A DNA stretch of 64,000 nt from IMG/VR virus record IMGVR_UViG_3300027834_000005, positions 124,001 to 188,000 of that record; one strand, written 5' to 3'. Below, in pieces: positions 10,401 to 31,247 of this stretch (position 1 is the stretch's first letter; each line of letters opens with the position of its first letter). The position numbers and the translations under genes were made by a program. The notes under the pieces are model-generated. The model made no database searches. It had not been told where the DNA came from and saw only the letters and a list, made by a program, of their open reading frames with translations.

Positions 10401-13400
10401 AGTTTTATATTCAAATACGTCATAATCAGAAAGATCGTTATTTTTTACATAGTAAACTACTTCTTGAGTGTTATTGTCGAAGTAAAAATCCCACACGATA
10501 TCTTCTATGACATCACCAGAATCAATTTCTCTACCTTGCCCAATAGCGTTACCGTTTCTAAACCCAAGAATATCATATTCAGCCGAACCTGTTTGTACAG
10601 GATAAACGGACAATGGAATTCTCAATTCATCAATGGAGTTTATGTATTGATTTTGAACAACTGAGTAACGACCATCTACATATACCGCTCTATCGATAAC
10701 TCTAAGTTTAGTTTTCTCATCATTTCTAGCCCAAGTATAATCAAACTCCACAACGCGACTAGAGGTAGTCTGTCTGAAATAGTAGTATCCTGGAATCTCA
10801 ACGTCCGTCTTATTCACAGAGTACGAATACCTAACAGTTTCCAAGTCATGTTCGAATACGATTTCAGAATTCTGATTTCTATTTCTGTACTCTAATTGCA
10901 TATTCAAATATGGATCTACGATTCCACTTGTCTCGTCTATCTTATACGAGAATATTTCAGAACCAGTGAACGTATTATCTGGGAATTCGTCATCGTTACC
11001 TATCGTGATAGGCAACCCATCACTACCAAGTTCAGAGAAATACAACTGGAACTTAGGAGGGGTATTTATAGATGTGCCTCTACTGTTATCTGAGCTGGCA
11101 TCAGTGGAATCTAATTCCTGTTCCCACTTTCTACTATCAAAGTAAAAGCTTTTGCCATCATAAGGCGCACCGGCATTTTTAACAACTACTGCGTCTCCGT
11201 GTATTGCGAAATCGGTATCGTTTTCGTATGGCAGTAATAACCACTGCGTTCCATAATTAGGAATATTAACAAAGTTACTAGTGGTACGCTTAGATGCCTT
11301 CCACACGTATTCTGCAGAACCAATACTTCCAACTAACACTTCTCTAACATGCAAATTCATGATGTCGTCTAATGAGTCTGGCAATGCTGACAGAGTTATT
11401 GTCACTGTCTCACCGGAATAACTAACACTATCAACTATAGTGTTATTGAATTGTACGTTCTCATTGTTACTATCAGTGATCTTTATTGAAACAATATGAT
11501 CTTCAGTTACATTATCTATGCCGGTGTTTATATTATAGGTTAAAGCTCCATTAGTAAGAACTGCATGGTTAACAACATTAGCATTAACATATATGTCCAC
11601 AAGGTCCATATTCTGTTCTGCCATATTATTACCATCGATTAGACCGTCAGTTCCATCTTTAACTTTAGCCGTTACAACGCCCACTACGCTCGCGTAGAAG
11701 ACGACAGTGAATTCCTTAGTAAGGGCAACACTAGTCCATAAGAACTCAGACTCGTCTATTATAACACCGTCAACGTACACTTTAACGTAGTTAGGGTCTT
11801 CGATATCGGTCATAGTAGCTTGATATTCAAGAGGGTTAGCCTGTTGAACCATTGCTAATTCTTCTTCAATATGGTCTTGAACGTCAACAGTGTATGTTAC
11901 ATCGTTTAAGTTAGGACTAAGTTCGTACCAATCAGGATTAATAATGTCATTTTTACCTAGAACTACGTGGAATTCTACTTCTACGAAAGTATCAGGCGCG
12001 ACATCAAAGTCTATGGTAATGCTACCAGAAATAGTTACGGCTGCGGTGTATGAATCTTTTGACACAATACCGTTTGTGTCAAATACTTCGTATACGAAAA
12101 TTCTTTCATCAGAGAAGTTAGTATTAGCATTAGATAACACATCTGTTGCTAGTACAGTATACTCTAAAGCGCCAGTCTGAGTAGCAGCGACGTTGTTATT
12201 TACGCTGTATGGGTCGCCTGTAAGAGGAGAAGCATTAACTACATCGAGTGTATCTGAGAATGATGTGTTAGTGAAGTTGACGCCAAGACCAGTTGCTACT
12301 GATGCGAAATAAACTAAAGGTAAAGTCGTGCTTCTTCTAACCACTGAAAAAACGTTATCTTTCGCTTCCGAGAAAGGCTGCATAACAGTAAATACGTACG
12401 GTGTGGTTCTCGCCTTATACTGTTCTAGAGTATCTCTTTCTATAGGCACACTGTCGCCTAGGAACACAATCCTATCGTCTTCACTTAAAGGAAAACTAAC
12501 ATTAGTCACGTCGCCATCAGGAGTGATTATGATATCGCCATCTTTACCGTCAATAGTGGTAGGAGAATCAATAGTTGCGAATTCAATGTCCTTATGTGCT
12601 TCTGTTCCGTACCCGTATAATTCCAAATCTTTATCAAAAGATAATATAGGACGTCTCGCTTGCTGGGCATTAATAGAAAGATCCAAACCGTTCTGTGCTG
12701 ACATAGCAGACAGTGTACTTTTATGGAACCAGAAATTATTAGCAGACCAGTCGTTGTTGTTTCTCGCGCCAAAATCAACAGTAGTATAATCTGGGTTAGT
12801 ATCCAAATAAGGTCTAGCATTCCCAGACTTATCATCCGCATATCTCAAATGTAGTTCTATGCCGAACTCACTACCTACGCCGGTAACTTGATATGAATCG
12901 TTATATGATGCTGAGTCTTCAAATCTAACAATAACGTCACTAGTGAATACGAAACCATCGGTAGTGGTATAGCCCTCATTACCAATTATATTTGCTTCTA
13001 TCTCGCTATCGTCTACGTCAGAGATAACAACTTCTTGACCAGTGAAATCTGTCTTCCATAAGTACGAAGAATAGTTAGTGTACTTATCTATGTCTATTGG
13101 TGGCGCAAAAGAATATTGCTCAGACCTAAATAGTCTGTCATGATTCCCAGTATTACCACCTTCATTTTCGATATAGTTCAGTAAGTCTTGAAGAAATACT
13201 TCATTACTTCCTACGCCAGTAGTACTTTCAGAAAGAGCAATCGGCTCAAGCTGATTCCACGTCCTTTCTTTGCTTGGTTCAGGCACATAGAAGTCTTTCA
13301 GTGGATCATAAGACCCACCTTCTCTTCTACCTATGTACCCATTTATAGATTCTTTTTCTACTGAAGAAAAAACTTGCTCGAACGTAGAGTCGAAAAACTT

Positions 13401-13465: not shown

Positions 13466-16400
13466 TTATAGCCTCATATTAGTTTCTGTTAATGTATCTA
13501 CGATAATAATATCATTTACTTGCGCCGTAGATATAAACAGTTCATTTGATTCCGCTTTCACTTGGAAAAGGTTACCAAATTGTGATTCTTTAGATTCCGG
13601 TACTAACACTACAGAACCAACGATACCAGCCATATTAGTATGGATATATGCCGCTAGTTCAGTAAAGTAAAATGTCTCACCGAAATCCCAGTTAGTTATC
13701 ATGAAGAATTCGTCTACCAATTCGACAATTCTAGATTTAATTTCGTTATTCGTTAATGCTGTTGATGGTACTTTAACAACTTTAAATTTAGCTCTTAATT
13801 CAGGCTTGGCCTGTTGTCCAAAAATAACTTTAAACTCTGACGGTCCAAAAACAATCTCATCACTCATCATTTTAAAATCATCCAAGTCACTAAAGTTAGC
13901 TCTTAGCTCTTCAGTTGTTGGAGGAGTAGGAAACTCTTTAAGAGTTTTACCATCAATTTTCCATTGCTGAACGTCATCATTATACGTCTGGGTTAGTACT
14001 ATCATGTCCATAATATTACTAACGCTAGGATCTATTCGATTATTAGACGGAGAAAAATGTCTCCATTTATAATCAAAACTTTCCTGAGTTGCAGACCCAC
14101 TATCTAAAGTAAATGATCTTCCATTTGCCACTTCATGTGACGTATCATTTGTGTAAATATACACTGTTCTATTCGCAGAGCTTAAGTAATCAAATGATTC
14201 TTCTCTAGCTGTATCGTATGTGAAGGGTGGCAGACCATCGTCTTCTCTCTTCGCAATACGTCTACTAGCTTCAGTTCTCATAGACTCAAGTACTGCGGTA
14301 TTAACAGTTATAGTGACCATGGGAATAAAATTACCAGTTGAGTCCGTTAAAATAGAACCCGTATCTGGATCTCTAGCTTCCCTAAATACTTCACTCTCAT
14401 ATCCTGTTTGTAAAACTTCAGTGTTTGTGTTGCCAAGTAACAAGTAAGTCATCGTGGCAGACTCCATAGTCTTCTGTAGTTCACTATAGTAAATATCTTT
14501 AGTAAGGAATAACCCAGAATCAATAATGTCAGTGTATGTGATACTGTCGTAAACAGTTCCGTTATCCAAGACCGGAATTTCACTTCTCACATCTTTCCAT
14601 ACCGTAGTCCACAATCTAGTATAGTCATCACCATTGGCGTCTAAAACTGTTTCGTGGAAAACCAAATCATTTTCACCGACTACATTTTTAAACAAAAAAG
14701 GATCGTCTGGAATACCGTCGTTATTAATATCAGCGGGTATAACTTCAATCTTTGCAGTGTTTAGATATCCGCTTGCTTCAAAATATGGCTTGAATGTATT
14801 AAGTACATAATCTTTTTCTAGTTTAGCCGCATTACTCGTGGAGGTTAATTCAATAACAGACCCCGCCACGATAGATCCATAAGTGGAACTATTGGTGATA
14901 TCGAATGAGGAGAAACTAGCCAAATATAATACTCCGTTAAGGATATTACCAGACACATCATATATTCCATCACCAGGTATTGTTAGCGTGGCAATAACGT
15001 TCGACTCACTAGCCGATCTTGACCCAAGAAGAATAAATTCATCTGGATATGTCAAGTTTGACCCTTCGGTCATTCTCCATCTTCTAGCGCCGGTATTATC
15101 ATCGATAAGAACCCACTTCTCGTTCGTGTCGATGTCGTTATTAGATCCACTAATAACCACTTCATCTATACTTGACACTAACTGATCAGAACTAAAATTC
15201 TTTTGATTTTCTGAATCAAAGTAAAACCTAACATCACTTTCCGATTCAAAAACGTATCTTGTACCTCTAGTACTAATGTCGTATCTAAGATTCGTGATAT
15301 TATTCACTTCGTAAATGGCTCTTAATACCCATCTAGTTATTTCAGAACCGTTAGAGATACTAAAATCTTGCGTAGAATTTGGCGTTACTTTCCAACCAAG
15401 CGTATTACTTCCGTCGATGGTAGTGTCCACTACGTACTCAAGACCGAAATTTCTTGTCGCACTAACTTCCGCATTAATTCTTCTTCTCTCATCTTCAGTA
15501 AACGTTGTTCTGAACGGAGGTAATATTTCTTCAATGCCCCAACCATTAGGAACATTAGCATTAACGAATAATTGCTTACCATCTAGATCTGAATCACCAG
15601 TGCCGGTGCTTATTCCCGAAACTGTCGCGGTTATATAATCTTTAGATCCACTGAATTCAGCGAATTTAATTACAGAACCTTCTTCTAGGTATTTGTCAAA
15701 ACCGTAGTCTCGGTTATCGAACCTAGGAGAGATATATCTGTTGCTTCCATCAGACATTTTCAAGAAACCTACATTATCTGATTGCGCACCAGTAACAGTA
15801 GTCCAAGAAACATCAACGTCAACTAGGAACACATTATCTTTTACATACCCTGCAGCGTCATTCCATAATCCAGACATGTAGTTTTTAAAGTCAGTGATGT
15901 ACTCATCATAAAAGAAATTAGAAAGTTCTCTGCCTCTAACTAACGTTTCCACGCCAGTGGTAGTAATGTAGTTGGCGGTATCAACAGCTGGGTCATACCC
16001 TATCTCCGTACTTGGAATTTGATCGTCTTTATACAGAGATCCGTCAGACGCGCTAATTAATAGGCTCTGATGAAAACCAGTGGGATCATTCAAAGAAATA
16101 TATCTACTATGCCCAGAGTGAGTACGGTTTATAGTTCTCATTTTCACGATCTCATTACCTCTAGATAATGGGAACACATTATAATCTTTATTGTTTACCA
16201 TCCTATCTTGAGTGTAGTAAACTTGAGGCGCTCTAACTTTCACGTCATCATTAGTTTCAGAAGGCGCAGAATTATTATTAGTTTCTTCCAAACCGAAAAC
16301 CAAACGAAGGTAATATGTTTGGGAATTAGTTCCGATATACGGGATTGTTATTTCTAAATCAGTAGCTTCGTCAGGTCTAACAACAAGCTTTCTATTAGCA

Positions 16401-17494
16401 GAAGATCTACCCCATACACGCATAATCCCAGTTGGAACTTCACCGAAATTACCATCAGGATACTGTATAGAGATACTGTCGTCAGCGCCAGACACAACAG
16501 AGTATATCGTTCTCTCATTACCGTCGATTGAATTATATACCACATTCTCATTACCACGAGAGTACTGAACCTTAGTCCATTTGTCCACGATATTACCATC
16601 ATCATCTATCTCCTGTACGTATACGTCAGTTTCATTAACATTGGTAGCTGATATAGCCTCAACTCTACTTTCTTCTGGGAACTGATATGCGAAGTCATAA
16701 TTTATTAACTCGCCTTGTCTGAAGTGCACGAAGAAACCAGTATTAGGAGACGCAAAACCTTGACCGTCATTACGATATGCCATATGGAACCCTTCACTTG
16801 GGTCTGGATGTCTCTCCGTAAAAGTACCACCATCTTCGAAATCTACATTGGCGATATTGAAAGCCATCTGCTCGCCATTAACTACTACTTGGATTGGATA
16901 AGCAACTTGAAGATTCTTTACGTTCTCTAACTTGTATAAGTCGGTATTAATACCGCCAACAGTGCCTCGCTTAACCGGCTTACCGAAAGGCGAAGATGCT
17001 GTGAATGCAGAGTTAAGAATGTTAGTGAATTGGTCGTAACTATCCATGTTATTAGGATCATTCCAGAACACCGTAGTGTTAGCTAGGTTCTTACCTAGAC
17101 TATCAGTCACTGACTCAGTAGTCTCAACTGCCGACAATTTGAACATGCCATTAGACGCCAAGTTTCTACTTGGTTGATAGTTCAGCATCTGTGCTAATCT
17201 AACTACTGATTCTCTACGGTCAGCGGTGTCCATTAAGTTTTCTCTGGTATTCAAGTCAGACCTGAATGCCAAAGACGTGCCTAAGTAGGATAGTAATTCG
17301 ATGATTGCTATGAATTCTGAACTCTCAATGTAATCATTGAAGTCTTCAGGATAGTTTCTGTTGACGTATTCTACCATACTGGCTTTCAGGGAATCGAAAT
17401 CGTACGCTCTGAAATCTACGTCTTTGAAGCTACGGTATATATTCTGGTAGTCTTCAGCGGAAAATAAGTTTGATTGTCTTGGACTTTGTGCCAT
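13466..17494 (-). CDS. gp6: Baseplate wedge subunit gp6-like, enlarged (1342 aa)
   Basis: N-terminal DFRAYDFDSLKASM...FNDYIESSEFIAIIELLSYLG...ENLMDTADRRESVVRLAQMLNYQP and the later QDRMV...DY motif; follows gp25. Confidence 0.85.
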   Translation of the reverse strand: MAQSPRQSNLFSAEDYQNIYRSFKDVDFRAYDFDSLKASMVEYVNRNYPEDFNDYIESSEFIAIIELLSYLGTSLAFRSDLNTRENLMDTADRRESVVRLAQMLNYQPSRNLASNGMFKLSAVETTESVTDSLGKNLANTTVFWNDPNNMDSYDQFTNILNSAFTASSPFGKPVKRGTVGGINTDLYKLENVKNLQVAYPIQVVVNGEQMAFNIANVDFEDGGTFTERHPDPSEGFHMAYRNDGQGFASPNTGFFVHFRQGELINYDFAYQFPEESRVEAISATNVNETDVYVQEIDDDGNIVDKWTKVQYSRGNENVVYNSIDGNERTIYSVVSGADDSISIQYPDGNFGEVPTGIMRVWGRSSANRKLVVRPDEATDLEITIPYIGTNSQTYYLRLVFGLEETNNNSAPSETNDDVKVRAPQVYYTQDRMVNNKDYNVFPLSRGNEIVKMRTINRTHSGHSRYISLNDPTGFHQSLLISASDGSLYKDDQIPSTEIGYDPAVDTANYITTTGVETLVRGRELSNFFYDEYITDFKNYMSGLWNDAAGYVKDNVFLVDVDVSWTTVTGAQSDNVGFLKMSDGSNRYISPRFDNRDYGFDKYLEEGSVIKFAEFSGSKDYITATVSGISTGTGDSDLDGKQLFVNANVPNGWGIEEILPPFRTTFTEDERRRINAEVSATRNFGLEYVVDTTIDGSNTLGWKVTPNSTQDFSISNGSEITRWVLRAIYEVNNITNLRYDISTRGTRYVFESESDVRFYFDSENQKNFSSDQLVSSIDEVVISGSNNDIDTNEKWVLIDDNTGARRWRMTEGSNLTYPDEFILLGSRSASESNVIATLTIPGDGIYDVSGNILNGVLYLASFSSFDITNSSTYGSIVAGSVIELTSTSNAAKLEKDYVLNTFKPYFEASGYLNTAKIEVIPADINNDGIPDDPFLFKNVVGENDLVFHETVLDANGDDYTRLWTTVWKDVRSEIPVLDNGTVYDSITYTDIIDSGLFLTKDIYYSELQKTMESATMTYLLLGNTNTEVLQTGYESEVFREARDPDTGSILTDSTGNFIPMVTITVNTAVLESMRTEASRRIAKREDDGLPPFTYDTAREESFDYLSSANRTVYIYTNDTSHEVANGRSFTLDSGSATQESFDYKWRHFSPSNNRIDPSVSNIMDMIVLTQTYNDDVQQWKIDGKTLKEFPTPPTTEELRANFSDLDDFKMMSDEIVFGPSEFKVIFGQQAKPELRAKFKVVKVPSTALTNNEIKSRIVELVDEFFMITNWDFGETFYFTELAAYIHTNMAGIVGSVVLVPESKESQFGNLFQVKAESNELFISTAQVNDIIIVDTLTETNMRL

Positions 17495-22833: not shown

Positions 22834-23826
22834 ATGAAAAAAAAGAAAATAAATTACTTAAACAACAAAGATCTTCTAGATGAAATAGGGAAAAGTAAAC
22901 TAACTTTCTGTCAGTTCACCGAAGAAGATTCTGAGAAATATGACTTTATAGTGGACACACCACGTCCAGAGTCACGCGGCAAGAAGGTAAGGATACCGCC
23001 TCCTTCAACCATCGAATACAGCGAGATGTTAGAAGGTAGGAGAGCGCAGTGCTTATCTCCAGATACCGTAGCTACAGCCATCAAGAACAGAGCCGATAGA
23101 CTTTCTAAGTTTGGCTATGATCAAGCCATGAAAGGGTATGTTGAGGCTTATGACGCGCACGTAGATGCTATTGACGGCGGAACAATAGGCAAAAATGAAC
23201 CTTTCAAAGTTGCAAAACCTACGAAAAAAGAGTATACTGTTGATCCCGATGATATCATGATAGAAGATTTGGTCATTCGTTTCCATACGTTTGAACACAT
23301 CCCTCTTAGTGATAACACCAAGGATAACCCAGTTACTGAAGCAGACTATAGGGAAAAAGTCAGCTTCGTGCCATTCATTCAATACAAATATGATATTACT
23401 GATGGTAAGGTTTCAGGGCTAAGAATAGTGGGACGATCTCACTTCAAGGAAGGAATCTACTCCAACGAGCACGGTGATATCACGCCTAAGCTTGCTAATA
23501 TGTTCATTCTTCTAACCAATAAATATGCCCAAAAGCATAATTGGAGAGGATACACTTACGTCGATGACATGAAGGGTAATGCCTTACTTCAGCTATCCAT
23601 TATGGGCTTGCAATTTAATGAAGCTAGAAGTGATAATCCATTCGCGTACTTGACCACTACACTTAAGAATGCATTTCTTAGAGTACTGCAGTCTGAAAAG
23701 AAAGAGCAGGACATCAGAGATGACTTAATTGAGAAGTCTGGACAGACACCTAGCAACACTCGCCAAATGGATCATGATAAACACATCCAAGAAGAAAGAG
23801 AACGCCTTAACAACAACGTAAACTAA
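22834..23826 (+). CDS. gp55: Sigma factor for late transcription, gp55-like, with a large insertion
   Basis: NYLNNKDLL...NWRGYT...GLQFNE..SDNPFAYLT...NAFLR matches the T4 gp55 motifs NYVNNKELL, NFSGYT and NPHAYIT..NAF; lies upstream of gp47/gp46 as in T4. Confidence 0.88.
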   Translation: MKKKKINYLNNKDLLDEIGKSKLTFCQFTEEDSEKYDFIVDTPRPESRGKKVRIPPPSTIEYSEMLEGRRAQCLSPDTVATAIKNRADRLSKFGYDQAMKGYVEAYDAHVDAIDGGTIGKNEPFKVAKPTKKEYTVDPDDIMIEDLVIRFHTFEHIPLSDNTKDNPVTEADYREKVSFVPFIQYKYDITDGKVSGLRIVGRSHFKEGIYSNEHGDITPKLANMFILLTNKYAQKHNWRGYTYVDDMKGNALLQLSIMGLQFNEARSDNPFAYLTTTLKNAFLRVLQSEKKEQDIRDDLIEKSGQTPSNTRQMDHDKHIQEERERLNNNVN

Positions 23827-23835
23827 AGGAACTAC

Positions 23836-24843
23836 ATGTCTGACTTATTTAAGCGAGTAGCCATGGCCACCGATATTCATTTCGGTGGTAAAGGCAACAG
23901 CAAGTTATTTAACGAGGACATTATAGAATTCTTCGAGTGGTTCATTTCAGAAGCTAAGAGTAGAGACGCGGAAACGTGTATCATTCTTGGCGACTGGCAT
24001 GATTCCAGAAGTTCTATCAATGTCTTAACTCTCAATTACAGCCTCAAAGCCTTAACAATGCTTAACAACGCATTCGAGAAGGTATACATCATAACAGGTA
24101 ATCATGATCTTTTCTATAGGGAAAAGAGAGATGTTCATTCTCTAATAGTAGGTGATGGATTAGCCAATATTACAGTCATAGACACTCCTACCGAGATAGA
24201 TAATACACTATTTTTACCTTGGTTGGTAGAAGAAGAGTGGAAAGATTGCGTAAAGAATAAATCTAAATACATTTTTGGCCACTTAGAATTACCTGGATTC
24301 AAAATGAACGCTATGATCGAGATGCCAGATCATGGGGGCCTCAATGGCAAGCATTTTAAAAACCAAGATTACGTATTCACTGGTCACTTCCATAAACGAC
24401 AGTATAAAGACAACATCCATTATATCGGTAATCCTTTTGGTCACAACTACGGTGACGCAAGTGATTTCGAACGTGGTGCTTGCTTCTTAGATTGGGGCGG
24501 AAAACCAGAATATATAAATTATGTGGATGGTCCTAGATACCATAGTCTCATGCTTTCGGATCTTTTAAACTGTGTCGATGATATAGCTACTGAGAAGGCC
24601 TATATTAAGGTCACTGACGACATGAATATCAGCTACGAAGATACGATTTCGTACAGAGATATGTTCTCCAAGCTCAATGTTAGGGAATTTAAACTGACAC
24701 CGCAAAAGGTAGAGTACGATCACGAGTACGATCCGTCCGAAAAGTTCGAAACAGTGGACGGTTTAGTAGTAAATGAACTCACAAATATCGACAGTGACAA
24801 CTTCGACAATGCAATTCTAATAAAGATGTACGATGACTTATGA
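23836..24843 (+). CDS. gp47: Recombination endonuclease subunit (Mre11/SbcD-like)
   Basis: Metallophosphoesterase motifs DIH, GDWHD, GNHD, GHL, GHFH. Confidence 0.93.
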   Translation: MSDLFKRVAMATDIHFGGKGNSKLFNEDIIEFFEWFISEAKSRDAETCIILGDWHDSRSSINVLTLNYSLKALTMLNNAFEKVYIITGNHDLFYREKRDVHSLIVGDGLANITVIDTPTEIDNTLFLPWLVEEEWKDCVKNKSKYIFGHLELPGFKMNAMIEMPDHGGLNGKHFKNQDYVFTGHFHKRQYKDNIHYIGNPFGHNYGDASDFERGACFLDWGGKPEYINYVDGPRYHSLMLSDLLNCVDDIATEKAYIKVTDDMNISYEDTISYRDMFSKLNVREFKLTPQKVEYDHEYDPSEKFETVDGLVVNELTNIDSDNFDNAILIKMYDDL

Positions 24844-26588
24844 TTAAACTAAAAAATGTAACGATAAGAAACTTCATGTCGGTAGGTAATGTGTCCCAAG
24901 GCGTAGTTTTGGACAACGACCCTATCGTCTTAGTCCTAGGCGAGAACAGGGATCTAGGCGGAAACGGCAACAGAAACGGCGTAGGGAAGTCTACTATAGT
25001 GAATGCGATAACGTATGCACTATATGGAGGGGCCTTGACCAATATTAAGCTCAATAACCTAATAAACAAGACGAACGGCAAGAACATGTTCGTGACGATA
25101 GAGTTCACTAATGGTAACGACACGTACAAATTAGAACGTGGGCGTAAACCTGACGTGTTTAATATGTATATCAATGGATCTAACCCATACGATAATGACG
25201 CACAGGGCAATAATAGGCTCACGCAGAAGGACGTAGAAGCCATTTTGGGAATGAATAAAACATTATTCTCTAATATCGTCGCTTTAAATACGTTCAATGA
25301 GCCTTTTTTGTCCATGAAGGCAGCGCCACAACGAGAAATGATGGAGTTACTACTAGGAATGACGAAGCTTTCTGAGAAGGCTGTGTCGTTGAAGGAGAAT
25401 ATAAAGGATACTAAGGACGAAGTCAAGGAAGAAGAGTACAAAATAAAGTCCATTGATGACAGTAACTCAGTTATCCAACGAAGTAAAGACAGCCTTGCGT
25501 CTAAATCGAGTAAGTGGGAGACAACTAGAGAGCAGAACCTTGTAGATTTAACTAGTGCACTGTCCCTTTTATCCGAAATGAATATTGAAGATGAACTTGA
25601 GAATCATAGATTACTAGGCGTCAAGAAGGAAGCTGATACGTTATACCGAGAGGCATCCACTAACTTAAACATACTCAGTAAAGACTGTCAAGCGCTTATT
25701 AAAGAAAGAGACAGGGAACAACGCCATTTGGATAGCGCCACTGAAGGCGTATGTCATGCTTGTAATCAGGTATTACCGGATGACAATACTACTGAGACCA
25801 AGAAAACACACGCAGAGACCATAGAAGAGCTAAATAAGGCCATAGAAGAACTTGAGGCTGGCATAGCTATACTCACTGCCGACGTGGACAGTATGGCCAC
25901 TATAGAAGCTCCTACAGTTTTCTACTCTACGTACGAGGAAGCATATAACCACCAGATTCAAATACGCTTAATGGCTGATGAACTGGAAAAGGAAATGAAT
26001 TCCACTAATCCGTATGTCGATCAGATAACTGAACTGGACACATCTATAAAGAAAGCAGATTTCACTAGAATGGAACAGCTCGTAGCTATACGTGACCACC
26101 AAGATTTTCTTCTAAAATTATTGACGAATAAAGATAGCTTCATCAGAAAGAAAATTATAGACCAAAATCTATCATTCTTAAATGACAGGTTACGACATTA
26201 CTTAGAAACTATTGGACTGCCACACTCAGTTGTGTTCAATCCTAACTTAGATGTTTACATTACTGAGTATGGCCGTGACTTAGACTTCGATAATTTGAGT
26301 AGAGGAGAAAAGACTAGACTTATCCTTTCTCTATCATGGGCGTTCAGAGACGTATATGAATCCATGAATGGATCTATAAATTTATTATTCATCGATGAAC
26401 TATTAGACTCAGGCCTAGACGCGAGCGGAACCGAATCCACATTAGCTGCGCTTAAAGTTATGGCTCATGAGCAAAATAAAAATGTAATACTGATCTCCCA
26501 TAGGGAAGAGTTAGTAGGTAAAGTAGACAATATCATTACTGTATGTAAAGAAAATGGCTTTACCCGTATAGAGACATCGGAGTTGTAA
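24840..26588 (+). CDS. gp46: Recombination ATPase subunit (Rad50/SbcC-like)
   Basis: Walker A NGVGKST, zinc hook CHAC, signature LSRGE, Walker B LLFIDE, ISH motif. Confidence 0.95.
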   Translation: MIKLKNVTIRNFMSVGNVSQGVVLDNDPIVLVLGENRDLGGNGNRNGVGKSTIVNAITYALYGGALTNIKLNNLINKTNGKNMFVTIEFTNGNDTYKLERGRKPDVFNMYINGSNPYDNDAQGNNRLTQKDVEAILGMNKTLFSNIVALNTFNEPFLSMKAAPQREMMELLLGMTKLSEKAVSLKENIKDTKDEVKEEEYKIKSIDDSNSVIQRSKDSLASKSSKWETTREQNLVDLTSALSLLSEMNIEDELENHRLLGVKKEADTLYREASTNLNILSKDCQALIKERDREQRHLDSATEGVCHACNQVLPDDNTTETKKTHAETIEELNKAIEELEAGIAILTADVDSMATIEAPTVFYSTYEEAYNHQIQIRLMADELEKEMNSTNPYVDQITELDTSIKKADFTRMEQLVAIRDHQDFLLKLLTNKDSFIRKKIIDQNLSFLNDRLRHYLETIGLPHSVVFNPNLDVYITEYGRDLDFDNLSRGEKTRLILSLSWAFRDVYESMNGSINLLFIDELLDSGLDASGTESTLAALKVMAHEQNKNVILISHREELVGKVDNIITVCKENGFTRIETSEL

Positions 26589-26589
26589 T

Positions 26590-27147
26590 ATGGACCACAA
26601 GCCTTGGGAAGAAACTGACGTATGGAAATCTGAGAGCCAATATCTAATTTGGCTTCGAGGAAATCTAAGAAAAGCGTTATGGCAGCATTTTCCGCCTAGG
26701 ATTGCGTTCAAAAATGAAAGGTGCATTAACGTGACACCTAACATCAGAGAACAATATGGTCTCAGCAAGGCTTGTAAGTACGTAGGGGTGTGTGAGTTCT
26801 GTGAGGAATACCATCCCAAGTCTAAACTTGAAGTGGACCATATCGAAGGATGTGGTGCGCTTACATTAGAGAATAAATCTGAATGGATAGACCGTCTTAT
26901 ATGTTCCACATCGAATATGAGATTAGTCTGTAAGCCATGCCATAAAATTCACACTTACTCGGAACGAATGGGTATATCATTTGAGAGCGCTAAATTAGAG
27001 AAGAAAGTAATTGAATTTTCTAAAAAGCCCACGTCTATGCAGAATACATACCTCAAGAAAAGAAATCTACCCCACAATAATGCTAAAGTGAGGAAGGAAT
27101 CTTTTAGGAAGGTGCTGCTTGAAGACTCAAAGGCCGAAATCACTTAG
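26590..27147 (+). CDS. HNH endonuclease
   Basis: CEFC...EVDHI...LVCKPCHKIHT: Zn-binding CxxC pairs flanking a DH/H motif. Confidence 0.8.
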   Translation: MDHKPWEETDVWKSESQYLIWLRGNLRKALWQHFPPRIAFKNERCINVTPNIREQYGLSKACKYVGVCEFCEEYHPKSKLEVDHIEGCGALTLENKSEWIDRLICSTSNMRLVCKPCHKIHTYSERMGISFESAKLEKKVIEFSKKPTSMQNTYLKKRNLPHNNAKVRKESFRKVLLEDSKAEIT

Positions 27148-28737
27148 TTTGTAATTCCCATTTGGGTACTTATTGATGACATCTGCGATCTTCGTCTTAG
27201 TTCTATCCTGAAAACTACTACCATTGCGGTATGCAATCTTCTTAGCCGACATGAAATTCATCTCGGCTTTTGTCATGCCTGTACTTTTGTCGCTTTTCTT
27301 TCTAGGATTACCTGATGAGGTCCATTTCTTTCTTTTCTTTTTGAATACGCCTGTCTTACCTTCAACTACCGCACCCGTAAATATACCAGCTAACATGTCA
27401 GCAGTGGTTTTGTCAAGTACTATTACCTCTACTTCCCTTCCGACTTGCATAAAATCGTGAGAACGTATTGCAGTGCGACCTATAGTCTGATAAACACTCT
27501 CCAATTTGAAAGCGTCGTTAAGAACATTACCGTCTATATTACTTAATTTTTCCATAATACCCTTTACAGCAGTAGGGAATTGACATACGGTGAGTGCTGC
27601 CACTCTATGATATGACGTATATTGGTTCTGTCCGTGACTCTTTACGCTTATACTGGCTACATTATCCAAGTCATCTAGGGTCTTTACGTTACCATTTCCG
27701 TTGAAAGTCCAACTCTTATGGGTCGCATAAAGGAAATCTCCATCTGGCCAGTGTGCTGCTACTTGTGAAAAAAGTAGATCCCTAACATTCTGCTTACTTT
27801 CGACTGGCAGACCCTTCGGCTTATTATCGTGCAGCATACCTTTACTGGATTTATCATTATCATCCATTAAGTGGTATATCTTTAATAAAGATCCATGTGA
27901 GTGGGTATCCTTACTTATTAAGCTGGCCAGCGCAGTGTCTTCAACGAATTCTACGTCAAATACCTCTTTGAATAGATGGTACTGTAGGGTATTCAGGAAA
28001 TCAGCACACAGCACAGTGGTAGATTTGAACTTACTCGCTATACTGATAGGATCTACGATAGACACCGTTTGTAAATATGTATCGGTTACTTTCGCAAAAA
28101 CTGCACTGGTACGTTTCTGCATAACCGAAAGAATTCTGGAAAATTGTTTACAGTTAAGATTATCACGTTTATGATACATCTTAATGATATCTTCATACTC
28201 ATCCACATATTCTGGGTTGTCTTCTAAGCGATATATGTCCTCCACCACGTGATGGCAACTTATAAAATCAAGATACGTGTCGAATGTTTCTTCATCTGGC
28301 GTAAATCTTAGGAAGTCGAATACCGGCAACTGCTCATCTACGTACAGGGAACAGCCCTTAAGCATCGTTTTATTTGAGGTGAGGTCAGAGTCCAAATACA
28401 TCAGTAACGCCGCGTGGCTGATCACTAGAGCACCATAGGACACATCATCACATAGATCACGAATAGCTTCATCGACCTTATCTACCATTCCGCCTTGTTC
28501 AGCGGACACAGTATCCTCGTTACCTTTTTCTTCCAGAATAGCCATTGACTGCGAAGATAGTACTAACTTAGCCTTTCCGCCTTGCCTTCTTATGTCCGTG
28601 TGTGTCTGTAGTGCAAGTTTGGCAGTGGGAGCAGCATATATCGCGTTTATATGGGGTGATGTATTTATGTGAGATATAAATGCCGAGGTCTTTCCTGCCC
28701 CAACACTCGCGTTCACGTATAGGATCTGTGTTTTCAT
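27127..28737 (-). CDS. SF2-like helicase/ATPase, candidate origin-binding protein
   Basis: Walker A ASVGAGKT, motif Ia YAAPT, Walker B YVDE, motif VI YQTIGRTAIR; Lys-rich C-terminal tail. Confidence 0.7.
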   Translation of the reverse strand: MKTQILYVNASVGAGKTSAFISHINTSPHINAIYAAPTAKLALQTHTDIRRQGGKAKLVLSSQSMAILEEKGNEDTVSAEQGGMVDKVDEAIRDLCDDVSYGALVISHAALLMYLDSDLTSNKTMLKGCSLYVDEQLPVFDFLRFTPDEETFDTYLDFISCHHVVEDIYRLEDNPEYVDEYEDIIKMYHKRDNLNCKQFSRILSVMQKRTSAVFAKVTDTYLQTVSIVDPISIASKFKSTTVLCADFLNTLQYHLFKEVFDVEFVEDTALASLISKDTHSHGSLLKIYHLMDDNDKSSKGMLHDNKPKGLPVESKQNVRDLLFSQVAAHWPDGDFLYATHKSWTFNGNGNVKTLDDLDNVASISVKSHGQNQYTSYHRVAALTVCQFPTAVKGIMEKLSNIDGNVLNDAFKLESVYQTIGRTAIRSHDFMQVGREVEVIVLDKTTADMLAGIFTGAVVEGKTGVFKKKRKKWTSSGNPRKKSDKSTGMTKAEMNFMSAKKIAYRNGSSFQDRTKTKIADVINKYPNGNYKLSDFGL

Positions 28738-28763
28738 ATCTTACCTTTGTTCAAATATAGCGG

Positions 28764-28792
28764 AGTATAGCATAAATCCCATGTATTGGCAA
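28764..28792 (-). promoter_or_regulatory. Sigma70-like promoter for the helicase
   Basis: On the - strand TTGCCA-17 nt-TATACT with extended -10 TG. Confidence 0.75.
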
Positions 28793-28802
28793 CAAAGTTC
28801 CA

Positions 28803-29299
28803 ATTTTGGATCGCGGTGTTGAGTAAAGTAAAGGAATGATTTTTTTATATAATATATAATTACTAGATAGATTATAGTAGTTATCTTTATTATTTCATTA
28901 TACAAAATATTTTGTCCTTCATTTCAATTTATATGTGTGTAATTACGTCGATAATGCATCGATATGTGTCTATATGTCATTAATATTCCATTATATGAAT
29001 TGACGTCGGTTCTTCGCAAGCTCAGCTCCAACGCAAATCCACATAATTCCTTTGGTTATGTCATCGCTTCGCTCTACAAACCAATTGATATTATTTAATT
29101 TGTAGCTTAAAAACAAATAAAGGCGTACACAATATAATTATATATGTGATATGGAGGTACGACATATGACATATCTAATATTGCAGTGTCGGTTGAGTGG
29201 AATGAAATGGAACTGACCGTCATAGCAATATGTCATTATACATTAATAATTTATATTTTAATACATTAATAATATATAATGAGCACCGCGATTCAAAAT
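28803..29299. other. AT-rich non-coding element bounded by 18-bp inverted repeats; candidate replication origin or structured RNA
   Basis: Arms ATTTTGGATCGCGGTGTT (28803-28820) and AGCACCGCGATTCAAAAT (29282-29299); internal ATATGT/ACATAT repeats, a 14-bp palindrome (28902-28915) and several hairpins. Largest ORF-free gap in the window. Confidence 0.55.
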
Positions 29300-29302
29300 C
29301 TG

Positions 29303-29331
29303 TTTACATATCGAACTAAATAAGTTATAAT
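29303..29331 (+). promoter_or_regulatory. Early promoter (T4-like GTTTACA -35)
   Basis: TTTACA-17 nt-TATAAT, preceded by G. Confidence 0.75.
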
Positions 29332-29356
29332 AGTGCCACATTAAATGGAATAACAA

Positions 29357-29641
29357 ATGTATCTTAATATAAACTTCTCTTTACTAGACTTAGCCTTACA
29401 AGAAAACATAATCAATGGGTTTGAAGCCACATTCATCAAAGAAAAGCAAGGGTTATATGTGAAACTTCTCTCAGATAAGCAATTACTTGTATTTGAAGAC
29501 GTATTTCCTAGATTAATAGAGGGCACTATCTCAGTAACCGAAGAAGAACCTCAGACACACGCCTCATACGCGCCAAACCACGAATATAAATATTCATATC
29601 AGTATGACGCTAACTCAGACCCAGATCATGATCCAGAATAG
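29357..29641 (+). CDS. Small acidic hypothetical protein (94 aa)
   Basis: ATG downstream of the early promoter; its stop abuts the convergent stop at 29642. Confidence 0.55.
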   Translation: MYLNINFSLLDLALQENIINGFEATFIKEKQGLYVKLLSDKQLLVFEDVFPRLIEGTISVTEEEPQTHASYAPNHEYKYSYQYDANSDPDHDPE

Positions 29642-30169
29642 TTACTTCCACGTCTTACCGGAATATACATCCAGTAATTTATTCTCCCAATCTTTGCCAT
29701 ATAGGTCTAAGACGTCTTGATCCACATGTAAAGTTATAGACACTACATACTTGCCTATATTCTGAAACCTCACGTAACCAGTAAATTTATTGAAGTTTAA
29801 GTATATGAAAGAGTTGATTTTAAGAAGTATATCACCAATTTCACCTTCTATCAAGTTAGTGCCTTCACGATGGGACATGTATTTTATAGTCCCTTTCTGT
29901 AAAACAACGTCAGTGTAAATTTCATCACCTGTCATTTCTTGTGTGTAAATTTTACCAACCATAGTCTTGCATTGGTTTATTGATAAGTCATAAACGACGC
30001 CATCACCATAGTTGAAGGCATCGATTTTATGTTGATTTTTTCCATTATAATAAAGGGACCAGTTAATCTTCTGGGCGTCTAGTATCTTGGTAGTTTCGCA
30101 AGCCCACTTAATATTCTTAAGTCTGCTTGCTTCTTCTACTGTTCTAGGTATGTATACTGTGTCTTGCAT
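29642..30169 (-). CDS. Hypothetical protein (about 175 aa)
   Basis: Track ORF 29642..30190; ATG 30169 has AAGGA upstream and avoids overlap with the gp51-like gene. Confidence 0.65.
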   Translation of the reverse strand: MQDTVYIPRTVEEASRLKNIKWACETTKILDAQKINWSLYYNGKNQHKIDAFNYGDGVVYDLSINQCKTMVGKIYTQEMTGDEIYTDVVLQKGTIKYMSHREGTNLIEGEIGDILLKINSFIYLNFNKFTGYVRFQNIGKYVVSITLHVDQDVLDLYGKDWENKLLDVYSGKTWK

Positions 30170-30180
30170 AATTGTGTCCT

Positions 30181-30414
30181 TTATAACCATTCTTTGCCGG
30201 TCATATTCTGTATCTTGTGGTTTAGCTTCTTAAGCATCCGGTTTCTTTCTAGATGCGACATACGTCTAGCTTCAGTGTAGGTTACCCCACCATCCATGTA
30301 CACGCACATATCTGTAATCTGGTCTTCAATCAACTCAGAACTTTTTTCAAGGGACTTAATCGTTTCCGATATACGTTCGTCGTCTAGACTTATTAAGACC
30401 CCGTAGAAAAATTT
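30181..30414 (-). CDS. gp51: gp51-like baseplate hub assembly chaperone domain, probably expressed as a -1 frameshift extension of gp26
   Basis: ETIKSLEKSSELIEDQITDMCVYMDGGVTYTEARRMSHLERNRM resembles small gp51-like proteins; the frame is -1 relative to gp26 and there is no in-frame ATG for about 33 codons after the slippery site. Confidence 0.6.
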   Translation of the reverse strand, partial: KFFYGVLISLDDERISETIKSLEKSSELIEDQITDMCVYMDGGVTYTEARRMSHLERNRMLKKLNHKIQNMTGKEWL

Positions 30415-31247
30415 ACAGGATTTGTCTCTATCTGTGAACTCCATGTGTTTTCGCATTCATCACACTTAATAGTTACGTTGGTGTCTATGCCTATACCGTT
30501 GATTTTTTTCACTTCAGTTTCAATCGACTTCGCATCTCTTATTTCAATGTTCTTGAGAAGATCAATGATGTTTGCCCTATTTGACTCGTCTGCGTACAGA
30601 TCAATGTTAGCCTCGTCATCATGTAGACGGTATATGCTACCCGCTATAAGCTCGGCATTAAGAGCTGTCATTTTCTTTATGGACTTGTTGAGGACTTTAA
30701 GTACCTCTTCAGTACCGGCATTGGCGTTAATAAGTTGCTTCTGAACTTTTTCTTGCTCGAAAGCCAACTTCATCATCTTAATTTTGTCATTATATGTGAA
30801 AGGGCGCACAGATGCATTCAGTCCGCTACTTAACTTAACGATATATTCATCATCTAGGCTCTGGCAGTTAGCCAGCATTTCTTCTAGGTTAATAGCATAC
30901 GTGTTCTCGTGTGTACATTTACCGCACACTGAGGTGAAGTCAGTTTCTTTACCGTATGAAGCGACCCTTATTGCTGTTAATAGAGCATCAACATCATTGG
31001 TTAATAGCGACAGTGGCTTTTTCAAACCATCTACGCAGCTCTTAAGTACAGTGGTTACCGCCTCTCCATTAAGTAGAGCATCAGGGTTTTTAAGGATGAT
31101 CTCGTCATCACTGGTCATGGCACGAATGCCTACCTCTCCATTGTCCGTGAAGTCTATAACTTGGTCTGTGTAATATGTTGTACCGGAAGGAAGTGGCACA
31201 TATGTACTCACCTTGCGGTAATAATCGTGGAATATGTCAGAATTCAT
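30393..31247 (-). CDS. gp26: Baseplate hub assembly protein gp26-like
   Basis: YVPLPSGT...VGIRAMTSDDEIILKNPDALLNG...DVDALLTAIRVASYG...CxxC...CxxC: T4 gp26 family pattern. Confidence 0.85.
   Translation of the reverse strand: MNSDIFHDYYRKVSTYVPLPSGTTYYTDQVIDFTDNGEVGIRAMTSDDEIILKNPDALLNGEAVTTVLKSCVDGLKKPLSLLTNDVDALLTAIRVASYGKETDFTSVCGKCTHENTYAINLEEMLANCQSLDDEYIVKLSSGLNASVRPFTYNDKIKMMKLAFEQEKVQKQLINANAGTEEVLKVLNKSIKKMTALNAELIAGSIYRLHDDEANIDLYADESNRANIIDLLKNIEIRDAKSIETEVKKINGIGIDTNVTIKCDECENTWSSQIETNPVNFSTGS
30408..30414 (-). other. Candidate -1 ribosomal frameshift slippery heptamer A_AAT_TTT
   Basis: In the gp26 frame GTA AAT TTT TCT; fits X_XXY_YYZ, four sense codons before the gp26 stop. 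Confidence 0.6.

What the first reader, a model, noticed from the sequence alone, without database searches (positions are those of the whole stretch)
26590..29641. Candidate self-contained replication-initiation module: SF2 helicase plus adjacent origin-like DNA (plus HNH) inside the T4-like core
Seen: an SF2-like ATPase with a basic C-terminal tail, transcribed from its own sigma70 promoter away from the only large AT-rich non-coding region, which carries iteron-like repeats: ATATGT at 28931, 28962, 28972, 29142 and 29228, inverted GACATAT at 29161 and 29168, and ATATGTCATTA twice (28972, 29228). Established: SF2 origin-binding proteins exist (herpesvirus UL9 type), whereas T4 itself initiates from R-loops. 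Inference: this phage uses an initiator-helicase/iteron origin, a system unlike T4's. Best candidate in the window for an undescribed system.
Basis: partly seen in the sequence, partly recalled or inferred. Interest (0 to 1): 0.75.

Follow-up and report, generated by a model that had tools for sequence, protein, structure and literature searches.

The report
Conserved origin-like DNA beside phage helicase
A 619-base non-coding stretch in a marine jumbo T4-like phage is better conserved than the genes around it, has the layout of a replication origin, and always sits beside one unusual helicase gene, but nothing yet shows that the helicase binds it or that replication starts there.

Summary

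The gap is a real, constrained element:
- Related strains are 83-95% identical in the flanking genes but 97.5-99.5% identical in the gap.
- A roughly 75-nt core unit recurs in five lineages whose helicases are only 26-57% identical.
- The two least stable 40-bp duplex stretches of the whole 347-kb genome lie inside the gap, flanking the repeat cluster.
- A genome-unique 16-nt inverted element sits upstream of each of two outward promoters.

The helicase is not UL9-like, not UvsW and not the replicative helicase. It belongs to a widespread phage SF2 family (phrog_2467, YonV-like) whose other members have no such gap. A subclade with a C-terminal YKLSDFGL tail always neighbours the element, in one case with the gene inverted.

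T4 itself has origins with repeats, early promoters and accessory-helicase dependence at points of transcriptional divergence. So this is a variant of a known kind, not a system unlike T4's. Binding and initiation remain untested.

The parts
26590..27147 (+). HNH endonuclease gene (185 aa). It converges on the helicase gene and overlaps its 3' end by 21 nt.
   Evidence: phrog_1985, E 4.5e-43. A 185-aa gene lies in the same position in L002 and L003, and a partial one in L004. It is absent in PA5oct, RB43 and Aeh1.
27127..28737 (-). SF2 helicase (536 aa) of the phrog_2467 / YonV-like family. It has an inserted beta-rich domain (about residues 140-230) and a basic C-terminal tail (465-536) ending in YKLSDFGL.
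   Evidence: AF2 model pLDDT 87.7. Best solved matches are XPD/DinG, Z up to 14.9. The ESM Atlas points to YonV_C clusters. The tail motif occurs only in P0001-P0005 and P0009.
28764..28792 (-). Helicase promoter P_L: TTGCCA, 17 nt, TATACT, with TG upstream of the -10 hexamer.
   Evidence: Equivalent TTGCTT, TTGCAT and TTGCTA, each with a 17-nt spacer and TATAAT preceded by TG, can be read in L002, L004 and L005 (sequences).
28803..28825 (.). Left arm of the outer inverted repeat (core CACCGCGATCCAAAAT on the minus strand), 16-17 nt upstream of the -35 of P_L.
   Evidence: pair I1. The core has only these two copies in 347 kb. Both arms change together to ACCGTGAT in L002 and L004.
28839..28878 (.). 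Left AT-rich, easily melted segment (candidate DNA unwinding element).
   Evidence: Second least stable 40-bp duplex of the whole 347-kb genome, and the least stable 100-bp window. L002 and L004 have an equivalent segment.
28931..28982 (+). Three ATATGT(G/C) sites (28931, 28962, 28972) with a TCGATAATGCATCGA palindrome between them.
   Evidence: (family D3).
28990..29047 (-). Conserved hairpin C. It has an inner 7-bp stem (GCGUUGG/CCGACGU) and a conserved loop (GAGCUUGCGA). In the window it is stable only on the minus strand and only with RNA parameters.
   Evidence: RNA fold z -4.3 (minus strand) against +0.7 (plus strand). L002: -3.2 against -1.2. L005: -2.05 against -0.27. Two compensatory pairs. 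With DNA parameters z is -0.9 in the window. Not significant in L150.
29055..29078 (-). Block B, TGTAGAGCGAAGCGATGACATAAC on the minus strand. In L002 and L004 this position holds the inverted copy of block A.
   Evidence: 23 of 24 nt identical to L005, whose helicase is 33% identical.
29150..29174 (-). Block A (TATGTCGTACCTCCATA on the minus strand, 29150-29166) overlapping the first of two tandem GACATAT motifs on the plus strand (29161, 29168).
   Evidence: A-type blocks occur in L002, L004 (as an inverted pair 71-75 nt apart), L005 and L150.
29178..29231 (.). Imperfect hairpin (16-nt arms, 81% complementary). L002 and L004 have a CGGTCA...TGACCG hairpin at the same place.
   Evidence: (pair I5).
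29237..29276 (.). Right AT-rich, easily melted segment, containing a 23-nt tandem repeat (29229-29274).
   Evidence: Least stable 40-bp duplex of the whole genome. Family D1.
29277..29299 (.). Right arm of the outer inverted repeat (CACCGCGATTCAAAAT on the plus strand), 10 nt upstream of the -35 of P_R.
29303..29331 (+). Promoter P_R: TTTACA, 17 nt, TATAAT (11 of 12 matches).
   Evidence: Equivalents can be read in L002 and L004.
29357..29641 (+). 94-aa ORF with a conserved small N-terminal domain and an acidic, tyrosine-rich tail. Function unknown.
   Evidence: 38-43% identical to the 119- and 123-aa proteins of L002 and L004. No family hit. Model pLDDT 73, with no fold match above noise.

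Best explanation
The 619-bp gap is an autonomous cis-acting DNA element.

Layout. At the centre is a core of about 330 bp. It carries 4-5 copies of a GACATA(T)/ATGACATA site in both orientations and a conserved 75-nt unit: a GGAGG-N-ACGACATA-type block, then GACATATG, then a hairpin with loop GAGCTTGCGA. On each side of the core lies the most easily melted DNA of the genome. Outside those lies a genome-unique inverted 16-nt site placed just upstream of an outward-facing sigma70-type early promoter.

Most likely function (inferred). It is a replication origin of the kind T4 places at points of transcriptional divergence. A site-specific protein would load on the core. Divergent early transcription would supply negative supercoiling, and perhaps a primer RNA carrying hairpin C. 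The flanking AT-rich segments would open, and the phage's DnaB-like helicase would then be loaded.

Role of the helicase (inferred). The neighbouring SF2 helicase is the best candidate for an accessory or initiator helicase acting here. Its clade-specific basic tail ending in YKLSDFGL co-occurs with the element.

Shown: the anatomy, the conservation, the extreme duplex instability and the linkage. Inferred: origin function, and any contact between the helicase and the DNA.
For: 1. Constraint. Strains in runs X2-X4 differ from the window by 5-17% in the flanking genes. In the gap they differ by only 9 of 360, 2 of 218, 1 of 204 and 2 of 232 positions. L002 against L004: flanking genes 64-71% identical, gap 81%, with blocks up to 94%.

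2. Deep conservation. Core blocks persist in L005 (helicase 33% identical; 23 of 24 nt in block B) and in L150 (helicase 26% identical).

3. Autonomy. In L150 the helicase gene points into the gap and the gap is bounded by two 3' gene ends, yet the element is kept. It is therefore not merely the helicase's promoter region.

4. Unwinding potential. The two least stable 40-bp duplexes of the 347 kb lie at 29237 and 28839. The least stable 100-bp and 400-bp windows are also here. The twin arrangement recurs in L002 and L004.

5. Site cluster. Four of the genome's 42 ATGACATA copies lie within 264 bp. TATGTC/GACATA clusters occur in the gaps of L002, L004 and L005. L005 has six tandem 15-16-nt repeats containing ATATGT.

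6. Outer inverted site. It is unique in the genome, and its two arms co-vary between lineages.

7. Position. The gap lies where the large minus-strand block turns into the plus-strand block, at a local minimum of cumulative GC skew. T4 oriE, oriF and oriG sit at such points (PMC3016281).

8. Helicase link. The YKLSDFGL tail is found only in the six relatives P0001-P0005 and P0009. All five whose context is known adjoin the element. One family member is fused to a Toprim domain.
Against: - There are no experimental data. No RNA run was listed, and only assembled contigs were available for the DNA runs, so no marker-frequency profile could be made.
- GC skew follows gene orientation and shows no separate replication signal.
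- In the window the repeats are short, of mixed orientation and irregularly spaced (84, 109 and 63 bp), unlike classical iterons.
- Family members outside the subclade have no gap.
- The cultured relative PA5oct has a low-coding stretch at the syntenic place. It lacks this helicase, the core unit and the extreme instability.
- Hairpin C depends on G-U pairs on one strand, which points to an RNA function that an origin does not require.
- All lineages carrying the element form one clade, so the linkage could be inherited rather than functional.
Confidence: 0.4

Rival explanations
1. It is a transcriptional control hub. The outer inverted sites and the GACATA sites are operators for a phage regulator, for instance the 94-aa protein made from P_R. 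That regulator co-regulates the two divergent early promoters, possibly by DNA looping. The AT-rich segments are promoter-upstream or curved DNA.
For: - Each outer site sits at a fixed distance upstream of an outward promoter: 10-11 nt from the -35 of P_R and 16-17 nt from the -35 of P_L, in the window, L002 and L004.
- The two arms co-vary, as binding sites of one protein would.
- The gap holds 13 promoter-like sites against 7.0 +/- 2.9 in shuffles.
- The 94-aa gene is a one-gene unit driven from the gap and is conserved.
Against: - L150 keeps the core although both flanking genes end at the gap and no 94-aa homologue is evident.
- About 330 bp of near-invariant core is far more than operators need.
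- The 94-aa model matches no DNA-binding fold above noise.
- The sites occur nowhere else in the genome, so this would be a regulon of one locus.
Confidence: 0.25
2. It is a gene for a structured non-coding RNA, or a long regulatory leader, transcribed on the window's minus strand from the hub side toward the helicase side. Hairpin C is its conserved functional part.
For: - The hairpin is stable only on that strand in the window, L002 and L005 (z -4.3, -3.2 and -2.05, against +0.7, -1.2 and -0.27).
- In the window it needs RNA-type G-U pairs (z -0.9 with DNA parameters).
- It has two compensatory pairs and a conserved loop.
- The whole 451-nt core folds better than shuffles on the minus strand only (z -3.6 against -0.6).
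- Its orientation is fixed relative to the hub gene block even where the helicase gene is inverted.
Against: - No Rfam family matches, even at E up to 10.
- No conserved promoter or terminator pair is found, and there are zero terminator-like sites.
- L002 and L004 fold equally well on both strands (z -3.6 to -5.7), as DNA-level inverted repeats do, and L005 folds no better than shuffles.
- The hairpin is not significant in L150.
- Only five lineages are available, so the covariation is thin.
- No RNA run was listed.
- This reading is compatible with an R-loop or primer RNA at an origin, so it does not fully exclude the best explanation.
Confidence: 0.2
3. It is a mobile or recombination-prone non-coding cassette bounded by inverted repeats (MITE-like or inverton-like). 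Its near-identity between strains would reflect recent spread rather than function.
For: - The arms are 23 nt long and 83% complementary, 451 bp apart.
- The element is 99% identical in strains whose flanking genes are 83-95% identical.
- Several contigs in X3 and X4 run on into unlike sequence at 28893, 29042, 29250 and 29263 (table 7).
Against: - It is single-copy in 347 kb.
- It sits at the same chromosomal place in five diverged lineages, with lineage-specific sequence and co-varying arms.
- No transposase or invertase gene is nearby.
- No strand-switch joints were seen among the laid contigs.
- The loose ends come from short, low-depth contigs of more distant relatives.
Confidence: 0.05

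Closest known systems
Bacteriophage T4 oriE (12-nt direct repeats, early promoter, repEA/repEB; strongly affected by the accessory helicase Dda)
   Same: Both are non-coding repeat clusters in a T4-type genome. Both depend on, or are flanked by, host-type early promoters. Both lie where transcription switches strand, and in both an accessory helicase is implicated (PMC3016281).
   Different: No sequence is shared. The window's repeats are 6-9 nt, of mixed orientation and unevenly spaced. Here the helicase is SF2 (T4 Dda is SF1, from my own knowledge) and is encoded next to the element. No repEA/repEB homologue was looked for. Even in T4, the role of the iterons is not established.
Bacteriophage T4 oriF(uvsY) and oriG(34): a promoter plus a downstream A+T-rich unwinding element, primed by an R-loop
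   Same: Promoters adjoin extreme A+T-rich, easily melted DNA. There may be a structured transcript across the element. In T4 an SF2 helicase (UvsW) acts on the origin R-loops (PMC3016281).
   Different: The strong promoters here point away from the element. No MotA-type activator was found, though that search had no positive control. Block A is not a genome-wide promoter box. The phage's UvsW orthologue is a different gene, at genome 267217-268680.
Herpes simplex virus oriS with the origin-binding protein UL9 (an SF2 helicase with a C-terminal DNA-binding domain)
   Different: No sequence or fold kinship was found. The inverted blocks here are 71-75 bp apart (inner pair, in L002 and L004) or 451 bp apart (outer pair), against about 18 bp in oriS. 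Binding is untested.
phrog_2467 / YonV-like phage SF2 helicases (for example RB43 ORF277w and Aeh1p034)
   Same: Same family by sequence: phrog_2467 at E 4.8e-43 over the full length, and tblastn at 23-25% identity over 84-92% of the protein. The ESM Atlas neighbours carry YonV_C.
   Different: Those genes sit inside operons, after gene 55.2, with no adjacent gap. They also lack the YKLSDFGL tail. No function is known for any member; a literature search for YonV found nothing relevant.
XPD/DinG (Rad3-type) helicases
   Same: These are the best solved structural matches: two RecA lobes with an insertion in lobe 1. Foldseek E 7e-11 to 1e-9 and VIA Z 13-15.
   Different: TM-scores are only 0.4-0.47. 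No conserved cysteines are present for an Fe-S cluster.

Membership tests
SF2 helicase superfamily | Walker A (motif I), DExx (motif II) and QxxGRxxR (motif VI) on two RecA-like lobes | tested here: met
   GAGKT 13-17, DEQ 134-136 and QTIGRTAIR 417-425. These are invariant in 47 relatives. Pfam DEAD and ResIII are hit across the family. The two-lobe model has pLDDT 87.7, and all top fold matches are SF2 proteins.
Herpesvirus UL9-type origin-binding protein (Pfam Herpes_ori_bp, PF02399) | Sequence membership of the family | tested here: not met
   A Pfam scan at E up to 0.01 returns only DEAD. The 47 relatives hit DEAD, ResIII, Suv3 and Flavi_DEAD only.
Herpesvirus UL9-type origin-binding protein (Pfam Herpes_ori_bp, PF02399) | Fold kinship with viral origin-binding helicases | tested here: not met
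   The top 50 BFVD matches are phage helicases, nidovirus helicases and one poxvirus helicase. None is from a herpesvirus.
Herpesvirus UL9-type origin-binding protein (Pfam Herpes_ori_bp, PF02399) | Sequence-specific binding of the C-terminal domain to inverted origin boxes | not testable with these tools
   The complex-prediction job with DNA was not folded.
T4 UvsW | Orthology to T4 UvsW | tested here: not met
   phmmer of P0001 against PDB sequences at E up to 1 returns only two chance hits and no helicase. UvsW (2oca) is also absent from the profile search and from the top 50 of the fold searches. Another gene of the genome, at 267217-268680, matches 2oca at E 3.7e-22 over its full length.
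Replicative (DnaB/gp41-type) helicase | DnaB_C domain | tested here: not met
   The DnaB-like gene lies elsewhere, at genome 274623-276056: PF03796 at 62 bits and phrog_19 at E 1e-65.
XPD/DinG family | Four-cysteine Fe-S cluster domain in lobe 1 | tested here: not met
   The cysteines at 96, 129, 161, 196, 244 and 385 are not among the conserved columns.
YonV-like helicases (Pfam PF27199, YonV_C) | Match to the YonV_C model | not testable with these tools
   The local Pfam copy returned no such hit. The only evidence is that ESM Atlas neighbours (scores 0.96-0.97, TM 0.61-0.64) carry it. This is a lead, not a test.
Iteron-type replication origin (lambda, P1, R6K, pSC101 kind) | Three or more direct repeats of about 12-22 bp at regular spacing | tested here: not met
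   In the window there are only 6-9-nt motifs in both orientations, 63-109 bp apart, and two-copy direct repeats. L005 does have six tandem 15-16-nt repeats.
Iteron-type replication origin (lambda, P1, R6K, pSC101 kind) | Adjacent A+T-rich unwinding element | tested here: met
   The two least stable 40-bp duplexes of the 347-kb genome flank the repeat cluster. The same holds in L002 and L004.
Iteron-type replication origin (lambda, P1, R6K, pSC101 kind) | Initiator binds the repeats, and replication starts there | not testable with these tools
   No raw reads and no RNA runs were available. GC skew is uninformative.
T4 oriF/oriG-type origin | A promoter firing into a downstream unwinding element | tested here: inconclusive
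   A weak inward candidate, TTGAAT-16-TATTAT at 29296-29269 (minus strand, 9 of 12 matches), faces the right AT-rich segment, but it is not convincingly conserved in L002. The strong promoters face outward.
Known RNA families (Rfam 15) | Covariance-model match | tested here: not met
   The best match has E 0.96 and lies far below its gathering score.

The most novel reading that the evidence does not exclude
The subclade of YonV-like SF2 helicases with the basic YKLSDFGL tail are sequence-specific origin-binding initiators. On this reading they recognise the GACATA-type core and open the flanking AT-rich DNA. That would be a UL9-like strategy, evolved independently in jumbo T4-like phages of bacteria, possibly working with a primer or regulatory RNA that carries hairpin C.
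Probability: 0.12. Interest if true: 0.8.

Novelty: new variant of a known kind. Interest (0 to 1): 0.55.

Why it matters
Replication origins of T4-like phages are poorly defined even in T4, and none is known for the jumbo PA5oct/RaK2-like lineage or its uncultured marine relatives. This locus gives a sharply delimited, testable candidate. It is about 500 bp long, more conserved than the proteins around it, contains the most meltable DNA of a 347-kb genome, and has a fixed helicase partner.

If it proves to be an origin, it would assign a function to a widespread phage helicase family that has none (phrog_2467, YonV-like). It would also show how origin elements and accessory helicases stay linked through genome rearrangement. 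If it proves to be a regulatory RNA or operator hub instead, it is still one of the most strongly constrained non-coding elements seen in a T4-type genome.

Tried and rejected
- **UL9 kinship.** No Pfam hit and no fold match.
- **UvsW or replicative helicase.** Both are encoded elsewhere in the genome.
- **XPD-type Fe-S helicase.** No conserved cysteines.
- **Small proteins in the gap.** The ORFs 28964-29098 (+), 28991-29116 (-) and 28741-28905 (-) have no family hit. The apparent peptide similarities follow nucleotide conservation. The window and L002 differ by two 2-nt indels inside the hairpin, 4 nt in all, so no reading frame is shared.
- **A genome-wide promoter class using block A or GACATA.** The motifs are not enriched upstream of other genes.
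- **MotA-type activator.** None was found, but that search had no positive control.
- **Rfam.** Nothing matched.
- **GC skew as an origin marker.** It tracks gene strand only. Plus-strand genes left and right of the locus have the same skew.
- **PA5oct as a cultured proxy.** It has a low-coding stretch of about 1.3 kb at the syntenic place. It has no homologue of this helicase, no core unit and no extreme instability there. Its four reported ncRNAs lie elsewhere (PMC7318152).
- **Clamp-binding tail.** I recalled, from memory only, that the YKLSDFGL tail resembles T4-type sliding-clamp-binding C-termini. No other protein of the genome ends in a similar motif, so the idea is left as an untested lead.
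- **Fold of the 94-aa protein.** No match above noise.
- **Complex prediction of helicase plus DNA.** The job was not folded and is no evidence either way.
- **Collection scans.** Scans of viral contigs with the protein, a protein profile and DNA patterns found no further relatives. A 14-mer pattern gave only chance hits.
- **RNA runs.** None was listed.
- **Five-lineage covariance test of hairpin C.** The 3' arm is misaligned in L005 and L150, so the counts are weak. No covariance model was built.

Full report
**Where the window lies.** The window is bases 124001-188000 of a 347-kb virus record. The same DNA also lies on a 410-kb metagenome contig. Genome GC is 40%. By portal protein, the nearest cultured phages are the Pseudomonas jumbo phage PA5oct (59.6% identity) and Agrobacterium phage Atu_ph07 (47%). 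The close relatives of the locus come from marine metagenomes, and DNA runs that hold it are from marine water and marine sediment.

**Gene order around the finding.**
- a 330-aa ORF, 22834-23826 (+), at the place where PA5oct annotates its late sigma factor; not examined here
- gp47-like phosphoesterase, 23836-24843 (+)
- gp46-like SMC ATPase, 24840-26588 (+)
- HNH endonuclease, 26590-27147 (+)
- SF2 helicase, 27127-28737 (-)
- gap, 28738-29356
- 94-aa ORF, 29357-29641 (+)
- 182-aa and 91-aa ORFs (-)
- gp26-like baseplate hub, 30393-31247 (-)
- a 667-aa protein, then the gp20-like portal (+)

**Check of the observation.**
- The gap is the only non-coding stretch of 250 bp or more in the window. 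At GC 29% it is among the most AT-rich in the genome.
- The named motif is enriched against local dinucleotide shuffles: 8 ATATGT against 2.0 +/- 1.4, and 4 ATATGTC against 0.26.
- The clearest statistic is genome-wide. The 8-mer ATGACATA occurs 42 times in 347 kb, and four copies lie within 264 bp here.
- An unbiased 'commonest k-mer' test is not significant, because pure A/T words dominate. So the repeats alone would be weak evidence. What makes the region interesting is what follows.

**The gap is under stronger constraint than the genes around it.**
- Contigs of related strains in three marine-sediment runs were laid on 27000-30400. In the helicase and in the genes to the right they differ from the window by 5-17%. 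Examples are 73 of 662, 57 of 330, 33 of 344, 20 of 263 and 22 of 411 positions.
- In the gap they differ by only 9 of 360 (28651-29010), 2 of 218 (29114-29331), 1 of 204 (28927-29130) and 2 of 232 (28884-29115) positions.
- An independent pair shows the same. L002 and L004 are 64-71% identical in five flanking genes but 81% identical in the gap, with 100-nt blocks up to 94%.

**Anatomy of the gap, conserved in the window, L002 and L004.**
- At each end there is an outward-facing promoter of host sigma70 type. P_L is TTGCCA-17-TATACT with an upstream TG. P_R is TTTACA-17-TATAAT.
- Just upstream of each promoter lies one arm of an inverted repeat. Its 16-nt core, CACCGCGATYCAAAAT, has only these two copies in the 347-kb genome. 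In L002 and L004 both arms read ACCGTGAT, so the two arms change together.
- Just inside each arm lies an extreme A+T segment. The segments at 29237-29276 and 28839-28878 are the two least stable 40-bp duplexes of the entire genome. The region also holds the least stable 100-bp and 400-bp windows. L002 (5434 and 5851) and L004 (1739 and 2145) show the same twin arrangement.
- Between the AT-rich segments lies a core of about 330 bp with the GACATA-type sites, two imperfect hairpins and a conserved unit of about 75 nt. That unit has block B or inverted block A (…ACGACATA…), then GACATATG or its like, then hairpin C with loop GAGCTTGCGA.
- In L002 and L004, block A (TATGTCGTNCCNCCATA) forms an inverted pair around a 71-75-nt spacer that is very A+T-rich. 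In the window the second arm has drifted into block B.

**The core reaches far beyond close relatives.**
- L005 carries a helicase only 33% identical. It shares block B at 23 of 24 nt, an A-type block and a version of the hairpin. It also has six tandem 15-16-nt repeats (TATAGATATATGTGR) at the end of the contig.
- L150 carries a helicase 26% identical. It has a 630-bp gap between the helicase gene and the same 176-aa / 70-aa / hub gene block. That gap holds an A-type block, GACATATG, the hairpin segment with the identical loop GAGCTTGCGA, and three GGGTGCGAT sites that resemble the outer-repeat core.
- In L150 the helicase gene points into the gap and both flanking genes end there. The element is therefore not simply the helicase's promoter region. 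Its orientation is fixed relative to the hub block, not relative to the helicase.

**RNA or DNA?** The evidence is mixed.
- Hairpin C folds far better than shuffles on the window's minus strand (z -4.3) and not on the plus strand (z +0.7). The same bias is seen in L002 (-3.2 against -1.2) and L005 (-2.05 against -0.27).
- The alignment shows two compensatory pairs. In the window the hairpin depends on G-U pairs, so with DNA parameters it is not significant (z -0.9). This favours a transcript.
- Against that, the whole core folds equally well on both strands in L002 and L004 (z -3.6 to -5.7), and L005 folds no better than shuffles. The hairpin is not significant in L150.
- No Rfam family matches and there are no terminator-like sites. 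No conserved inward promoter could be identified by reading the relatives' sequences, and no RNA run was listed.
- The region does not code for protein. The window and L002 differ by two 2-nt indels within the hairpin, so no reading frame is shared.
- I therefore treat a structured RNA as a live rival. It is also a possible component of an origin, as a primer or R-loop RNA.

**The helicase.**
- It is a genuine SF2 protein, with motifs I, II and VI invariant in 47 relatives.
- The model is confident (pLDDT 87.7). Its best solved matches are XPD/DinG helicases (Z up to 14.9), but it has no conserved cysteines for an Fe-S cluster.
- It belongs to phrog_2467, a family of unknown function. The ESM Atlas places it among YonV_C-bearing clusters, some of which host inteins. 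A literature search for YonV found nothing relevant.
- It is not related to UL9.
- It is not UvsW, whose orthologue is at genome 267217-268680 (E 3.7e-22 to PDB 2oca). It is not the replicative helicase, which is DnaB-like and lies at genome 274623-276056.
- More distant members lie inside operons without any gap. These are RB43 ORF277w, Aeh1p034 and L128. PA5oct lacks the gene altogether.
- One 890-aa relative carries an N-terminal Toprim domain, which hints at a replication role for the family.
All five whose context is known adjoin the conserved element.
But these proteins form one clade, so it shows linkage, not function.

**Comparison with T4.** According to Kreuzer and Brister (PMC3016281):
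- T4 uses at least five origins with no shared motif.
[quoted passage not shown] - oriE, oriF and oriG lie where transcription switches strand and base composition shifts.

The present locus also lies where the large minus-strand block (genome 118.8-155.2 kb) gives way to plus-strand genes, at a local minimum of cumulative GC skew. That skew simply tracks gene orientation and cannot by itself indicate an origin. The locus fits the T4 pattern of an origin at a divergence point with early promoters, repeats, unwinding DNA and an accessory helicase. What differs is an SF2 helicase encoded alongside it.

**Verdict.**
- The element is real, conserved and autonomous.
- Its most likely role is a replication origin or an origin-plus-control region (confidence 0.4). 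A transcriptional control hub (0.25) and a structured RNA gene (0.2) are serious rivals, and a mobile cassette is unlikely (0.05).
- The specific idea that the helicase is a UL9-style sequence-specific initiator is not excluded, but it rests only on linkage and a basic tail (about 0.12).
- Novelty: a new variant of a known kind.

Noticed in passing
window 1461-13460 (-) and 13466-17494 (-): Two giant ORFs of 3999 aa and 1342 aa lie back to back on the minus strand.
   Followed up: no
L005 1-95: There are six tandem 15-16-nt repeats (TATAGATAT(T/A)ATGTRR) at the very end of the contig, upstream of the conserved core in a distant relative. This is the only regular iteron-like array seen in the clade, and the contig may be cut inside it.
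   Followed up: partly
L150 3345-3977: This relative has the helicase gene inverted, pointing into the gap. Its gap has three GGGTGCGAT sites (3434, 3478, 3536) that resemble the outer-repeat core. A PDDEXK nuclease gene lies upstream of the helicase, where the window has its HNH gene.
   Followed up: partly
window 29615 (94-aa ORF): The strain in run X2 has an in-frame 6-nt insertion (CAGACC) in the acidic, tyrosine-rich tail of the 94-aa protein (table 4).
   Followed up: no
protein P0025 (890 aa, relative of the helicase): It has an N-terminal Toprim_3 domain fused to this helicase family. Other relatives of about 800-900 aa have extensions with no Pfam match. ESM Atlas clusters of the family with LAGLIDADG/Hom_end domains suggest intein-bearing members.
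   Followed up: partly
L131 7840-9180 (PA5oct genome 75.8-77.2 kb): At the syntenic place, PA5oct has about 1.3 kb holding only four very small annotated ORFs (117-153 nt), with A+T-rich palindromes near 8900-9030. A RusA-like resolvase and a structural gene replace the helicase and the HNH gene.
   Followed up: partly
genome 25197-25232 (outside the window): An 18-bp tandem duplication, GATATACGATGACATAAT x2, lies inside a coding region. It is the only other place where two ATGACATA copies lie close together.
   Followed up: no
genome 192-212 kb (window coordinates 68-88 kb, outside the window): There is a run of about ten gaps of 270-1400 bp with GC 35-47%, unlike the AT-rich gap studied here. 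They were not scanned and may hold RNA genes.
   Followed up: no
whole record: The same sequence lies on a 410,284-bp metagenome contig (JGI24723J26617_10000007). The 347-kb virus record is therefore probably only part of a larger genome.
   Followed up: no
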